Part shown: positions 7,932 through 13,084 of the stretch, piece by piece
Layout of the letters: each line of letters begins with the position of its first letter
How positions within the stretch are numbered: position 1 is the first letter of the stretch
NCBI RefSeq assembly: GCF_048593235.1
Contig: NC_133620.1
Coordinates: 294,515,765 to 294,579,764, forward strand
Direction of reading: 5' to 3'
Origin: Sminthopsis crassicaudata
Taxonomy: Eukaryota
DNA: 64,000 bases
Made by a program: the position numbers and the translations under genes
Notes under the pieces: generated by a model
What the model was told of the DNA's origin: nothing
The model's database searches: none
The model's input: only the letters and a program-made list of their open reading frames with translations

Positions 7932-10900
7932 ATGCTGCCTCTTATCCCACTCTTCGTTCTGGGGCCTTTTTTTACTTCCTTCACCCTGCTATCCCTCACC
8001 CAGGCCCAGGGAGCTCCTGCCCAGAGCCCCAACTACACCAGGTAGGTCTATTTCCACTCTTAATGTACCCTTCCCAATGTCCACAGAATCCAATAAAGGA
8101 ACTCTGCTTTATGGATTTTATATTGCCGGGAAGCCATTAGGTTTTTTTTTTTTTTCCCCGTCTCACCCCTTAACTCCACACACACACTTTGACACCCCCA
8201 TCCTATTTGGCTATTACTTATCCTAAGTGCTCTTTCGTCTTGTTTTGGCTCTCTGGTTCTTTTAAATTTAGTTTCCCATTTGAAATTTCCCTCCTCTCCA
8301 CAGAGCCTTTTGTCTTCTACTTCTTTTTCTCTATCCTTCAACCCCTTATTCCAATTAATGTGACCTGAAAGGAGCAACCTCACTTTTAGAGGATTGGAAC
8401 TTAAGTATTTAAGAGGACTTTTGAAGGGGGATGGGTGGGTTAGAGGGTCAGGAGGAATTGATACCCAAATCCCAGACTTCAGCAGAAGCTGAGACAAGTG
8501 TGGTAGTTAAGGGGAGTTTGATGGCTGGATTGAGATATTGTTGCTTCCTCTCCCCTTAAATCTTATCCCTTCGTTTTAGCAGACTTGTGGCTATATCCAC
8601 ACATCTGGTGCTAGTTAAGTCAGCTGCTAGGCAGGGTAAAGGGAAAGAATTCCAAGAATTCCAGCCTTCTAGCCAGGGTAGGGGTGAAGGACCTTGGGGA
8701 ATGGGAGTAGAAAGGATATTGGGAATAGCTAGTCAAAACTATTTCCTCTGCTTCCTATCCCAGTTGGCTGTAATGCCATTTGCTTTGCTCATTTGCCAAA
8801 CTTTTTACCCATTTCTAGAAAAAACTCTAGTATTATCACCTCTCCTTTTGCAACCTTTCTCCTGCATCTGAGTTTCATCCCCATTTCTTTGTATACTAGT
8901 ACCTCAAAGCTTGACCTTTCCATTCTTAATACATTATTTTTGTTCTGCCTACTCTCACTGATACTGATTACCCACCCCCTTCATTTATGTCTGACCAACC
9001 CCCTAGACCCGTGTTCCTGTGTGGAGGGGATGTGACCGGGGAATCAGGCTACGTGGCAAGTGAGGGCTTCCCCAATCACTATCCCCCTAACAAGGAATGC
9101 ATCTGGACAATCATGGTGAGTGGTCCCCTCTGTTTTGTGCTCTGCCTTTTCAACCATTTCCTACCTTCTGGAACCAGGACAGCTTCTCTTGGGATCAAGT
9201 CCTCCCCTAAGACTTAAAGATCCTTCCTCCAGTCAGGTTCCAGAAAATCCCCATCCTCTCTGCTAATCATCAAACTAGATCTGATTACTGCCTTCTCCCT
9301 ACCCACTCACTCCAAAGATGATGCTTTATTTTGATATATCCTATTAAATCTAGGCCTTAGCACTCCATTAGCATATAATTCCTCATTTAGGATTCTGGAG
9401 TCCTTTATTTTTCTGAAGCTTTTGAATTTATAGAAGTAATGGCTCTTCTTTGCCTTGTTGCTAAAGAATACTCCTGGGCAACAAGATCAAGGGAGTAAAA
9501 ACAAGCCTCATCCCTATCAAAAATGAAGTCTCACTGGCCAAAGAAAGACATCTAGGGATCCCTTCTCTATATCTTGGACCCTGGGACCCCTATATTACCT
9601 TGGCTTAACTGCTAGAGAGGGAAATTTTTGCTTCTTTCCCTGAACTACACCTAATCTGTTCCATCTCCCAATATGACTCCACATAGCTAAGGACAAAGCT
9701 CCTCAATAATGGTGAAGTTGGGAATATAGGTATGAAAAGAAATTAAATCTTGAAGTGTAACCCTTGTCCTCTTTGTCCTTTTCTTTTCTTCCCTAGGTCC
9801 CTGAGGGTCAGACTGTTTTTCTCTCCTTCCGAGTCTTTGACTTGGAATTGGATCCCTCCTGCCGCTATGATTCCCTAGAGATTTTTGCTGGGGCAGGGAC
9901 ATCAGGCCAGCGTCTTGGACATTTCTGTGGGACCTTCAGGCCAGGGCCTGTGGTTGCCCCTGGCAACCAGGTGACACTGAGGATGAGGGCTGATGAGGGG
10001 ACAGGAGGACGAGGCTTCCTGCTGTGGTACAGTGGGCGGGCTACCAATGGCAATGGTGAGATTACCCCTCTCCTCACTTCTCACTCATGGGTATAACACA
10101 TGCCCTGCCACCCTCTATCTTGGGTTCTACCAAAATCCAAAGAGAAAGACAGGTCCATCTCCATGAGATACAAACCCTTCTCCCAAGAGGCTGAAGCCTA
10201 TCCCTGCTAGTATATCCCATACCATATAGAGGGCCTTGTCTCCAGGTTATTATTCTTCTTAATCCCCATCCTCCACCTTGCATCCTCCCCTCTCCTTTTG
10301 TCCTTACTAACTGCTCCTTCAGTCCCACCTCCCCATCTTTTCTATCCTTCCTTTCCCTCCCTCCCACCACCCCCCTCTTCTAGGCACCCCCCCAGGTGCA
10401 AGGCGGAAATGGGGCGCAGACCCACGGGTGGACTGGGCGGCGTGGGGTTACTGGGATGGTGAGTAATTTCCTTAGCCCTTTATGTCCTCTGCAGTTAGAA
10501 CTCACCTAGCTGGGGAGGGGAGGGGGGGAAAGAGAATGAAGAGGTGGGAAGAGGGAGAGAATGGAGAGAATGGAGATGAGGAAGCAGATGAATATATTCC
10601 CCTTGTCCTAAATTATCACTCCCCCCAAACCCAGTCCTAGGATTCTGACCCTATCATCCTTTTCCCATAGCAGAAAACAACCTTTAAAATAAATGTGAGG
10701 ACCACTTGGATCAGAGAGAAGCATTAGAAAAGGCATTCTCCCATTTGAGATGAGAGAGCCCTCAAATGTGTGAAACTTCCAACTGAGAAGACTAAAAAAA
10801 ATCTGGAAGAATTCTGTTAAATTTGGTGTATAAGACTTCCCTTACAGAAGGAAAAAGTGGGAATAAGAGAGAGGAGGAGATTATGGGGAGAGGGAGAGTT

Positions 10901-13084
10901 TGGGAAGTGGGCGAGTTTGAGAAGTGAACCGAGAATACTCCAGCTAATTCCTATCATTTTCTAAGGATGGAGAAGTAGGGAAAATTTGAGGGTGCCTTTA
11001 TGTTGAAAGCCAGGTCCCTACTTTTCTTTACTCTCTTTTTGCTAATTTTCCCCCTCTCCTTATCTCCCCCCAACCCTCCTCCATTCAGGAATCCATATAT
11101 TTGATCTTCCTCCTCCCCCCCCATCCTTGAACACTAGTTTTCCCTCTCCCTGCCCCCACCCCATATCTATCTCTCTATCCAGAGCATCAGTTCTGTGGGG
11201 GTCGGCTGGAGAAGCCCCAAGGTACCCTGACCACACCCAACTGGCCTGAATCTGATTATCCTCCTGGAGTCAGCTGTTCCTGGCTCATCATTGCTCCCCC
11301 AGAACAGGTAACAACATTCCCTAGGCTCTTCATGGGGAACTCAAACATCTGCCTCTCTGCTATATTAATTAGAAACCCAAGTATCTAGTTAGCCAGTTAA
11401 TTTCTATTCTACTAGGTGATTTCTCTGACTTTTGGGAAATTTGACCTGGAGCCAGACACTTATTGCCGATATGATTCAGTCAGCATTTTCAATGGAGCAC
11501 AAAGTGATGATTCAAAAAGAGTGGGGAAATATTGTGGGGACACTGCCCCAAGGTGAGTGGGTAAGGACATTAGAAGAGCAAGTTTTAGTGGCTGGGATGA
11601 AGTGGGGGGGGGGGTGTTGGATCAAATAGAAAGGACCATGACTTAAAAAGAGGGTTGAATGGGTTGGGTAAGTTTAGAAGGAAGAGAGGGAGAAAAGAGA
11701 AGTGGTGGAACAGAGGCTTTTGGAGAAAACTTTGAGGGCATTATAGCTTGGGCACTTCCTTCCCCTGATAACCTACTAACTTCCCTTCCCTCAGTTCCAT
11801 CACTTCAGAAGGAAATGAACTCCTGGTCCAGTTTGTCTCTGATCTCAGTGTCACTGCTGATGGATTTTTTGCCTCCTATAAAGCCCAACCCAGAGGAGGT
11901 GGGAAGGAGGGCATTATTTCCATGGGGAACAACCAACCAGTCCCAGCTTCTCCACAACCACGACCTAAAGTCAAACCACCTACCAAACCCCAGACCCCAG
12001 TCCAAGAGAACTTAAAACCTACCCTTGCCACAGAGTCCGGTAAGCATGATTAAGTTAAATACCAGAGTTTAGGGAGCAGGGGTTTGGGGGATAAGGAAGG
12101 TGTATAAAACAGGGATCTGGGGTCTCGATACTGGACACATAAACACAACTTAGATCTTGGAGGATTGGGAAAGAATGAAGCAAGGCTGGGTGTGGGATGA
12201 GGAAATCATAAGGCTGATTTCCTCCATAGATACTCCTAAGACTCCTTGCCCAAAACAATGCAGAAGAACAGGCACTCTACAAAGCAACTTCTGTGCCAGT
12301 GACTTTGGTAAGCAAGCCAAGAATGAACTCCCTCATACCTCCTGACGGGAGCCTTCTCCTGCTCTTTGCAAGACTTTGTCTTCCTGCCCTCCTCAATACC
12401 TTTCTCTTTCACCTTTCTCCCCCTCTTCTCCCCCCTCCCCTCTCTCCCGTTTTCCATTGCCAATCCTTATATCCTCCCTATCCAAGCTTTATTTCCTACT
12501 ACAAAATAGCATCCTAACCTTTGGTCTATCATGTTAACTTGAGCTATTTTAGTCATACTGCCCACCATATGGAGCCTCCTAATGAGTCCTCCCTATAAAT
12601 TTTATTTTTCTAATCTTTTCCTGTCTTTTTTTTAAAGTGGTGACAGGGACAGTGAAGTCAATGGTTCGAGGTCCTGGGGAAGGCATCACTGTTACCATCA
12701 CCCTCACGGGTGTTTACAAGGCAGGGGCTCTTGGCCTATCTTCCACCTCCACTGGATCCCCACTTAAATTGTATGTACTCTGTCGGCAGTGTCCCCCAAT
12801 AAAGAAAGGTAAGCGAGCTTCTGGAAGAGCTGAATAAAGTATGGGTGGGGGATAACATATTGTGGGTTCCAAGAACAAACGGGAAGGAGACATAGAACCT
12901 CTTGCCTGATTCTCCAACTCTTCCTTTAGGGGCTAGTTACTTGCTGATGGGTAGTGTGGATGAAGAAGGAAGCGCAGTCCTCCACCCCAACAGTTTTGTG
13001 GTACTCTATCGACCAAACCAGGACCAGATCCTTACCAACATGAGCAAAAAGAAGTGTCCGTCCCAGCTTCCAGCCAGGGCCTGA
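7932..13084 (+). CDS. PCOLCE: Procollagen C-endopeptidase enhancer 1 (signal peptide-CUB1-CUB2-linker-NTR), 462 aa; exons 7932-8041, 9007-9115, 9797-10055, 11183-11307, 11416-11552, 11795-12039, 12230-12307, 12638-12808, 12930-13084
   Basis: All junctions are GT-AG and phase-compatible; exons sum to 1389 nt. Translation [71 protein letters not shown]...[29 protein letters not shown]...[18 protein letters not shown]...[11 protein letters not shown] matches PCPE1. Confidence 0.97.
10384..10458 (+). CDS. PCOLCE: Putative alternative cassette exon of PCOLCE (75 nt, phase 1-1, [25 protein letters not shown])
   Basis: Long pyrimidine tract ending ctcttctag, strong donor G|GTGAGT, length a multiple of 3, stop-free in the exon 3/exon 4 frame, CpG-dense relative to the surrounding intron. 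No expression evidence available. Confidence 0.65.

What the first reader, a model, noticed from the sequence alone, without database searches (positions are those of the whole stretch)
10384..10458. Hidden Trp-rich in-frame cassette exon between CUB1 and CUB2 of PCOLCE
Seen: inside intron 3 there is a pyrimidine tract + tag, then 75 nt, then G|GTGAGT. It is phase 1-1 and stop-free, adding [25 protein letters not shown] (4 Trp; basic then acidic/aromatic). A second acceptor at 10395 gives an in-frame 63-nt form. It keeps several CpGs in otherwise CpG-depleted intron DNA, which suggests purifying selection. Known: the CUB1-CUB2 tandem, joined by a short linker, cooperatively binds the procollagen C-propeptide to enhance BMP-1 cleavage. 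Inference: inclusion would give a ~487-aa PCPE1 isoform with altered enhancer activity or a new binding surface.
Basis: partly seen in the sequence, partly recalled or inferred. Interest (0 to 1): 0.7.

Follow-up and report, generated by a model that had tools for sequence, protein, structure and literature searches.

The report
Conserved alternative exon in PCOLCE linker
The 75-base stretch is a real alternative exon of the collagen-maturation gene PCOLCE, kept almost unchanged from platypus to placentals and already listed as "isoform X1" in many mammals; it is only missing from the dunnart's own annotation, and nobody seems to have tested what it does.

Summary
At 10384-10458 a long pyrimidine tract and TAG are followed by 75 stop-free bases in phase 1-1 and then G|GTGAGT. 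The segment encodes [25 protein letters not shown] between the CUB1 and CUB2 exons of the fat-tailed dunnart PCOLCE gene.

It is not a chance pseudo-exon. The same 25 residues sit at the same place in NCBI "isoform X1" models:
- Eight other marsupial species, seven with a peptide identical to the dunnart's.
- Many placentals, including mouse (UniProt D3YUE2).
- A platypus model that carries three extra residues, in frame.

Across 23 therian long forms, 19 of the 25 insert columns are invariant. That equals the CUB domains and far exceeds the CUB2-NTR linker.

The dunnart RefSeq protein (462 aa) is the short form only. In dunnart RNA-like contigs the joint 10055>10384 appears in one of four runs, at about a fifth of exon-3 donor use. 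The joint 10458>11183 was not seen, so full inclusion in this species is inferred from orthology.

AlphaFold2 gives no confident fold for the insert. It carries a WxxWxxW motif, which matches the C-mannosylation sequon, and a basic patch. I found no paper on the isoform.

Verdict: real and deeply conserved, already annotated elsewhere, functionally unstudied.

The parts
9797..10055 (+). PCOLCE exon 3 (second half of CUB1), ending in phase 1
   Evidence: The translation is found exactly in the dunnart RefSeq protein P0229. The canonical joint 10055>11183 is present in runs X5, X7 and X14.
10230..10383 (+). Pyrimidine-rich upstream intron flank (80% C/T) ending in TAG. It is conserved between dunnart and placentals.
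   Evidence: The frame-0 translation aligns with unspliced placental ORFs P0087, P0169 and P0173 from about 10286 onward.
10305..10311 (+). TACTAAC, a perfect branch-point consensus about 72 nt upstream of the AG (a distant branch point)
   Evidence: Located. It falls in the block SLLTAP, which is shared with the placental ORFs. Its use as a branch point is inferred.
10384..10458 (+). Alternative cassette exon, 75 nt, phase 1-1. It encodes [25 protein letters not shown] with a WxxWxxW motif and holds 5 CpGs.
   Evidence: Supported. The peptide is identical in seven other marsupials' isoform models and has one change in bilby. It shares 21 of 25 residues with the placental insert. The joint 10055>10384 is present in run X7.
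10394..10395 (+). Second AG, which would give an in-frame 63-nt form starting at 10396
   Evidence: Found. It is not used in any contig or any annotated isoform.
10459..10464 (+). Cassette donor GTGAGT
   Evidence: Seen. Its use is implied by the isoform X1 models of other species. No 10458>11183 joint appears in the four dunnart runs.
10464..10466 (+). TAA reached in frame if the donor is read through (...WGYWDGE-stop)
   Evidence: Supported. The same GE ending occurs in the platypus model P0074 and in the Logan ORF P0290.
10512..10528 (+). Cluster of G-runs downstream of the donor, a possible intronic splicing enhancer
   Evidence: Located. The function is inferred only.
11183..11307 (+). 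PCOLCE exon 4 (start of CUB2)
   Evidence: Supported. Joints are shown.

Best explanation
Positions 10384-10458 are the dunnart copy of an ancient, regulated cassette exon of PCOLCE.

Splicing. When the exon is skipped, the usual case, exon 3 joins exon 4 and the two CUB domains of PCPE-1 are linked by a short flexible linker (seven residues in the human protein). When it is included, 25 residues are inserted exactly into that linker, giving a 487-aa secreted protein. Three features look like the regulatory apparatus of a minor, probably tissue-restricted exon:
- a distant TACTAAC branch point;
- a long conserved CU-rich upstream tract;
- a consensus donor followed by G-runs.

Function of the insert (inferred). 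The insert is not just a spacer. It is as invariant as the CUB domains and carries a WxxWxxW sequon plus an RRK/R basic patch. My best guess is that the long form keeps procollagen C-proteinase enhancer activity, because the linker tolerates lengthening. The insert would then add a Trp-rich site that is C-mannosylated in the ER and/or binds an extra partner such as a glycosaminoglycan or a matrix protein.

What is shown and what is not. Shown: the exon, its conservation, its annotation in other species, and use of its acceptor in dunnart. Inferred: use of its donor in dunnart, its regulation, and every statement about function.
For: Anatomy: splice sites, phase and open frame are as described.

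Orthology:
- A phmmer search with exon 3 returned a 480-aa Weddell seal isoform X1 with [25 protein letters not shown] between CUB1 and CUB2.
- A word search on that region returned 16 protein clusters with the insert. They cover colugo, seals, cats, desman, camel, warthog, buffalo, whales, bat, mouse D3YUE2/XP_006504621.1, Peromyscus, vole, guinea pig, titi monkey and tammar.
- The tammar cluster and the devil X3 model add koala, brushtail possum, bilby, monito del monte, Gracilinanus, Monodelphis and Tasmanian devil. All have the dunnart peptide except one bilby change.
- A platypus UniProt model has the insert with an in-frame +3 aa.

Constraint:
- 19 of 25 insert columns are invariant in 23 therian long forms. 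The figures are 76% for the insert, 76% for CUB1, 79% for CUB2, 4% for the long linker and 39% for NTR.
- Placental DNA rebuilt from two reading frames differs from dunnart at only 7 or more of 75 positions and keeps the CpGs.
- There are 5 CpGs in the exon against 2 in the rest of the intron.

RNA: the joint 10055>10384 (GT..AG) is present in run X7 at depth 15.4, against 65.7 for the canonical joint.

Position in the protein: the insert falls between residues 133 and 134 of chain 6FZV_D, which is the inter-CUB linker. That linker is disordered in the crystal and described as flexible (PMC6372009; PMC3234718).

Sequon: WxxW/C is the C-mannosylation sequon read on nascent chains (PMC10154233 and PMC8433626).
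Against: - No 10458>11183 joint appears in any of four dunnart runs. Depth sums leave no room for a hidden contig over 10404-10467 in X7. Contigs can drop rare forms.
- The acceptor joint appears in only one of three runs that show spliced PCOLCE.
- No Logan-assembled spliced protein with the insert was among the candidates, so the long form is minor at best.
- Synonymous sites are also very conserved (3 synonymous and 4 non-synonymous changes across the marsupial-placental split). Part of the constraint is therefore on the RNA or DNA rather than the peptide.
- AlphaFold2 gives pLDDT below 50 over the insert in two runs, and Pfam finds nothing. There is no structural support for a folded module.
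- Most isoform X1 entries are automatic gene models.
Confidence: 0.85

Rival explanations
1. The element is mainly a regulatory or 'decoy' exon. Its strong splice sites engage the spliceosome and hold back removal of intron 3, tuning PCOLCE output through a detained intron. Its coding capacity would be secondary. This is compatible with the main explanation; the two could both hold.
For: - Intron 3 persists as unspliced contigs at 15-40% of exon depth in X5 and X7, while intron 4 has none.
- The acceptor joint occurs without a donor joint in X7.
- The platypus model and Logan ORFs end at the read-through stop.
- Synonymous sites and about 95 nt of upstream intron are conserved.
Against: - The open frame has been kept in monotremes, marsupials and placentals, and the only indel seen is a multiple of three.
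- Dozens of gene models splice it in fully.
- Contig depth is a poor measure of RNA level (tool caveat).
Confidence: 0.25
2. In the dunnart the main product of acceptor use is not a cassette isoform. Instead it is a transcript that keeps the downstream part of the intron and encodes a truncated CUB1-only protein ending ...WGYWDGE, or an NMD substrate.
For: - X7 shows 10055>10384 but no 10458>11183, and a contiguous contig spans 10383-11211.
- A TAA lies in frame at 10464-10466.
- The platypus UniProt A0A6I8PBN7 is exactly this form.
Against: - It may simply be a splicing intermediate.
- The contiguous CUB1-CUB2 region is needed for enhancer activity (PMC3234718), so a CUB1-only product would lack the known function.
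- Close relatives such as the Tasmanian devil have models with full inclusion.
Confidence: 0.15
3. The segment is a chance pseudo-exon in intron DNA with no biological role.
For: Eighteen loose in-frame AG...GT segments occur in this intron alone. The dunnart annotation lacks the exon.
Against: The peptide is near-identical across all three mammalian subclasses and is annotated as an isoform in many species. An acceptor joint is present in RNA-like contigs.
Confidence: 0.02

Closest known systems
PCOLCE isoform X1 of other mammals (e.g. tammar XP_072497492.1, Monodelphis XP_056673741.1, Weddell seal XP_030884477.1, mouse XP_006504621.1 / UniProt D3YUE2)
   Same: The position is the same, between the last CUB1 exon and the first CUB2 exon. 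The length is the same, 25 residues. The peptide is identical to that of seven other marsupials and shares 21 of 25 residues with placentals.
   Different: The dunnart RefSeq set has only the 462-aa short form (P0229). In dunnart only the upstream junction was seen in RNA-like contigs.
Canonical PCPE-1 (short form; structures 6FZV/6FZW, 9EN2, 1UAP)
   Same: The CUB1, CUB2 and NTR domains are all unchanged.
   Different: The inter-CUB linker grows by 25 residues, from about 7 to about 32. The solved and studied proteins all lack the insert. The 2021 PCPE-1 review mentions no PCPE-1 splice isoform.
WxxW/C C-mannosylation sequons of thrombospondin type 1 repeats and cytokine receptors
   Same: WAAWGYW is a WxxWxxW string in a protein that passes through the ER (sequon definition: PMC10154233, PMC8433626).
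   Different: There is no TSR domain: no Pfam match, no cysteines, and no confident fold. Modification is untested. PCOLCE is not mentioned in the main text of the human iPSC C-mannosylome paper.
Decoy exons that promote intron retention
   Same: The exon has strong splice sites inside an intron that is selectively retained in RNA-like contigs. I know this class from memory of Parra et al. 2018 and did not check the paper here.
   Different: The exon is frame-preserving and stop-free, and it is fully spliced into many gene models.

Membership tests
Orthologue of the annotated PCOLCE isoform-X1 cassette exon | Lies between the CUB1 and CUB2 exons, 75 nt long, phase 1-1, open frame | tested here: met
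Orthologue of the annotated PCOLCE isoform-X1 cassette exon | Encoded peptide matches the insert of annotated long isoforms | tested here: met
   The 24 residues encoded wholly within the exon occur exactly in tammar, devil X3 and Monodelphis X1. The insert shares 21 of 25 residues with placentals.
Orthologue of the annotated PCOLCE isoform-X1 cassette exon | Both junctions used in RNA of this species | tested here: inconclusive
   10055>10384 is seen in 1 of 4 runs. 10458>11183 is not seen. Only contigs were available, and these drop rare forms.
C-mannosylation substrate | WxxW/C sequon in a secretory protein | tested here: met
   WAAWGYW is encoded at about 10434-10454. The sequon definition comes from PMC10154233. 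The signal-peptide-bearing N-terminus is present in P0229.
C-mannosylation substrate | Mannose actually attached to Trp | not testable with these tools
   This needs mass spectrometry of the long isoform.
Thrombospondin type 1 repeat | Match to the TSP_1 domain profile, including the cysteine framework | tested here: not met
   Pfam gives no hit for the insert even at E-value up to 10. The insert has no Cys.
Poison (NMD) exon | Inclusion introduces a frameshift or a premature stop | tested here: not met
   75 nt is a multiple of three and the exon has no stop in frame. A stop is reached only if the donor is read through (TAA at 10464-10466).
Decoy exon / detained intron | Host intron selectively retained, and retention dependent on the exon's splice sites | tested here: inconclusive
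   Intron 3 is covered in X5 and X7 while intron 4 is not. Dependence on the splice sites was not testable.

The most novel reading that the evidence does not exclude
The 25-residue insert is a functional module that has been overlooked in PCPE-1 biology. It would be a C-mannosylated, Trp/Arg-rich tether, conserved for more than 180 million years. It would switch PCPE-1 between partners or matrix locations, or change how the two CUB domains clamp the procollagen C-propeptide. Its inclusion would be regulated by tissue, so that collagen maturation is tuned by splicing.
Probability: 0.3. Interest if true: 0.6.

Novelty: already known. Interest (0 to 1): 0.4.

Why it matters
PCPE-1 is the specific enhancer of procollagen C-propeptide removal and is being pursued as a fibrosis biomarker and drug target. 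All structural and biochemical work found here used the short form.

An alternative exon placed exactly in the tether between the two substrate-binding CUB domains deserves a direct test for three reasons:
- it is as conserved as those domains;
- it is present from platypus to mouse;
- it carries a C-mannosylation-type motif.

For the dunnart genome itself, the practical result is a missing isoform in the annotation.

Tried and rejected
- Rfam scan of 9000-12500 found no RNA family.
- Repeat search found only low-complexity purine and pyrimidine repeats and a weak 14-nt inverted pair. The segment is not a transposon fragment or a hairpin.
No orthologous intron DNA could be fetched, so no proper dN/dS was possible. 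As a substitute I rebuilt the placental nucleotides from two overlapping reading frames. That leaves 7 ambiguous positions and rests on unnamed Logan ORFs.
- BLASTP of the frame-0 intron translation against P0087 reported only the cassette part. A local alignment with a plain matrix was needed to show the conserved upstream flank.
- A search for shorter spliced fragments with the insert, using the platypus query, found only an unspliced ORF, P0290.
- Literature searches for a PCPE-1 or PCOLCE splice isoform found nothing specific: the hits were gene lists, a review without isoforms, and one proteomics mention of D3YUE2.
- The Kronenberg 2009 paper on linker length is not held. My statement that lengthening the linker is tolerated is from memory of its abstract.
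- A metagenome DNA scan for the exon was considered and not run, because it could return human contigs.
- The dunnart exons were never joined into a spliced model for any search. Searches used single exons by reference or database proteins of other species.
- No human contig was fetched or compared. Whether the exon exists in human was not examined.

Full report
**What is in the sequence.** The window carries PCOLCE on the + strand. The translations of exons 3 and 4 occur exactly in the RefSeq protein named for Sminthopsis crassicaudata (P0229, 462 aa). Dunnart-specific residues in the long linker also match.

The layout around the candidate exon is as follows:
- Exon 3 ends at 10055 in phase 1.
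- Exon 4 starts at 11183.
- A 154-nt tract that is 80% pyrimidine (10230-10383) ends in TAG.
- The 75-nt segment occupies 10384-10458.
- G|GTGAGT follows it.

The frame set by exon 3 is open across the segment and rejoins exon 4. The insert reads [25 protein letters not shown]. The second AG at 10394-10395 would give an in-frame 63-nt form.

Five CpGs sit within 38 nt of the segment, against two in the other 1052 nt of the intron. Only 0.8% of 75-nt windows in the 64 kb reach five. The pattern alone is weak evidence, because the same intron holds 18 loosely defined in-frame AG...GT segments.

**Other species.** A phmmer search of exon 3 against 1.84 billion representatives returned a full-length 480-aa PCOLCE with [25 protein letters not shown] inserted between ...GRATSGT and EHQFCGG. 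It is "procollagen C-endopeptidase enhancer 1 isoform X1" of the Weddell seal. Its cluster also holds long forms from elephant seal, grey seal and walrus, next to 455-456-aa short forms.

A word search restricted to this region found 16 clusters that carry the insert:
- carnivores and relatives: seals, cats;
- cetartiodactyls: camel, warthog, buffalo, two whales;
- rodents: mouse (UniProt D3YUE2 = XP_006504621.1), Peromyscus, a vole, guinea pig;
- others: colugo, desman, a bat, a titi monkey;
- one marsupial cluster, represented by the tammar wallaby.

The tammar cluster holds isoform X1 of koala, brushtail possum, bilby, monito del monte, Gracilinanus and Monodelphis. The Tasmanian devil's isoform X3 also carries the insert. 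All marsupials have exactly the dunnart peptide, apart from one Pro-to-Leu change in bilby.

A platypus UniProt entry (A0A6I8PBN7) has [28 protein letters not shown], with three extra residues in frame. Annotated lizard, turtle, alligator and salamander proteins have no insert. The exon is therefore at least as old as the mammalian common ancestor.

**Strength and kind of constraint.** In an alignment of 23 therian long forms, invariant columns are distributed like this:

| Region | Invariant columns |
|---|---|
| Insert | 19 of 25 (76%) |
| CUB1 | 76% |
| CUB2 | 79% |
| NTR | 39% |
| CUB2-NTR linker | 4% |

As a substitute I combined the isoform X1 peptide with unspliced Logan ORFs that read the same DNA in another frame (P0087 and cluster mates). 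Solving for nucleotides consistent with both frames shows that placental DNA differs from dunnart at 6 determined positions. One further position must also differ, giving at least 7 of 75. Four of the changes are non-synonymous and three synonymous, and the CpGs are kept.

That is far less change than neutral sequence would show between marsupials and placentals. Low synonymous change means that part of the constraint acts on the nucleotides themselves, as is usual for regulated alternative exons. About 95 nt of upstream intron also align between dunnart and placentals, including a perfect TACTAAC at 10305-10311.

**RNA evidence in the dunnart.** Only Logan contigs were available. The table gives depths.

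| Run | Canonical joint 10055>11183 | Joint 10055>10384 | Note |
|---|---|---|---|
| X5 | 40.7 | none | spliced PCOLCE present |
| X7 | 65.7 | 15.4 (one 58-nt contig, GT..AG ends) | spliced PCOLCE present |
| X14 | 36 | none | spliced PCOLCE present |
| X1 | none | none | only genomic-type contigs |

- The X7 joint uses exactly the predicted acceptor, at roughly a fifth of exon-3 donor use in that run.
- No run shows 10458>11183. The summed depths leave no room for an undisplayed contig over 10404-10467 in X7.
- Instead, a single contig runs from 10383 to 11211.
- Intron 3 as a whole is held unspliced at 15-40% of exon depth in X5 and X7, while intron 4 has none.

So use of the acceptor is shown, use of the donor is not, and contigs cannot prove absence.

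If the donor is read through, the frame ends at TAA (10464-10466) after ...WGYWDGE. The platypus model and a Logan ORF (P0290) end the same way. No Logan-assembled spliced protein with the insert was among the candidates of two searches. This suggests that the long form is a minor species in most transcript assemblies.

**Where the insert sits in the protein, and a likely mechanism.** Against the solved CUB1CUB2 structure, the tammar long form aligns up to chain residue 133 and resumes at 134. Its 25 extra residues fall between these two (6FZV_D). This is the inter-CUB linker. It is invisible in the crystal and is described as flexible (PMC6372009; PMC6829435). CUB1 and CUB2 bind the C-propeptide trimer cooperatively while tethered by it (PMC3234718).

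From memory of Kronenberg et al. 2009 (not held here), lengthening this linker did not harm activity. On that basis I expect the long form to remain an enhancer.

AlphaFold2 gave pLDDT below 50 across the insert with two different alignments, and Pfam finds nothing there. The insert looks like a flexible segment, yet its sequence is held as tightly as a domain. It contains WAAWGYW, a WxxWxxW string that fits the WxxW/C sequon read by ER C-mannosyltransferases on nascent chains (PMC10154233, PMC8433626). It also contains RRK and R residues. My working model is a modified, Trp-rich docking or tether segment. This is inference only.

**Comparison with what is known.** The exon is the orthologue of an exon already present in public gene models of many mammals and in a mouse UniProt entry, so it is not new. 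What seems to be missing is any study of it:
- A 2021 review of PCPE-1 mentions no PCPE-1 splice isoform.
- Searches for PCOLCE or PCPE splice variants found nothing specific.
- D3YUE2 appears once, in a proteomics paper whose context I did not read.
- The solved structures found here all lack the insert.

**Limits.**
I did not fetch or compare human contigs, and I did not examine whether the exon exists in human.
- The sequencing-run search and the read-laying tool allowed one call each, so tissue distribution and raw-read junction counts remain open.

**Verdict.** The interpretation as a real, selected cassette exon is supported, but "hidden" applies only to the dunnart annotation. Function is untested. 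Interest is moderate: the exon is ordinary as a genome feature and already annotated elsewhere, but it is a well-defined and apparently unstudied lead for PCPE-1 biology.

Noticed in passing
window 10056-11182 versus 11308-11415: Intron 3 is present as unspliced contigs in RNA-like runs X5 (depth 32.9, against exons at about 80-114) and X7 (21-33 against 186). Intron 4 has no coverage at all. This may be a selectively detained intron.
   Followed up: partly
window 11075-11104: Run X5 holds a 1235-nt contig (depth 56.9) whose last 30 nt match 11075-11104. The rest is GC-rich sequence that is absent from the window, and there is no AG at the joint. It may be a chimera, a trans-joined RNA or an assembly artefact.
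   Followed up: partly
P0283 (Tasmanian devil PCOLCE isoform X3): This gene model pairs the cassette exon with an alternative N-terminus (MLEALGRRPKG...) that replaces the signal peptide. It may be a model artefact or an alternative promoter.
   Followed up: no
window 10464-10466; P0074; P0290: The in-frame TAA right after the cassette donor gives the same ...WGYWDGE end in dunnart, in the platypus UniProt model and in a cetartiodactyl-like Logan ORF.
   Followed up: partly
window 10247, 10517, 10789, 11115, 11362: Run X1 differs from the window by a 3-nt deletion and four single-base changes in introns 3 and 4. X14 shares the change at 10789. None lies in the cassette. These are probably polymorphisms.
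   Followed up: no
P0258, P0259 (deer and sheep models): Some deposited ruminant gene models fuse PCOLCE with an MSP-domain (MOSPD3-like) protein, Pfam PF00635. These are probably read-through mis-models of neighbouring genes.
   Followed up: no
whole window: The window holds 342 N. They were left untouched.
   Followed up: no
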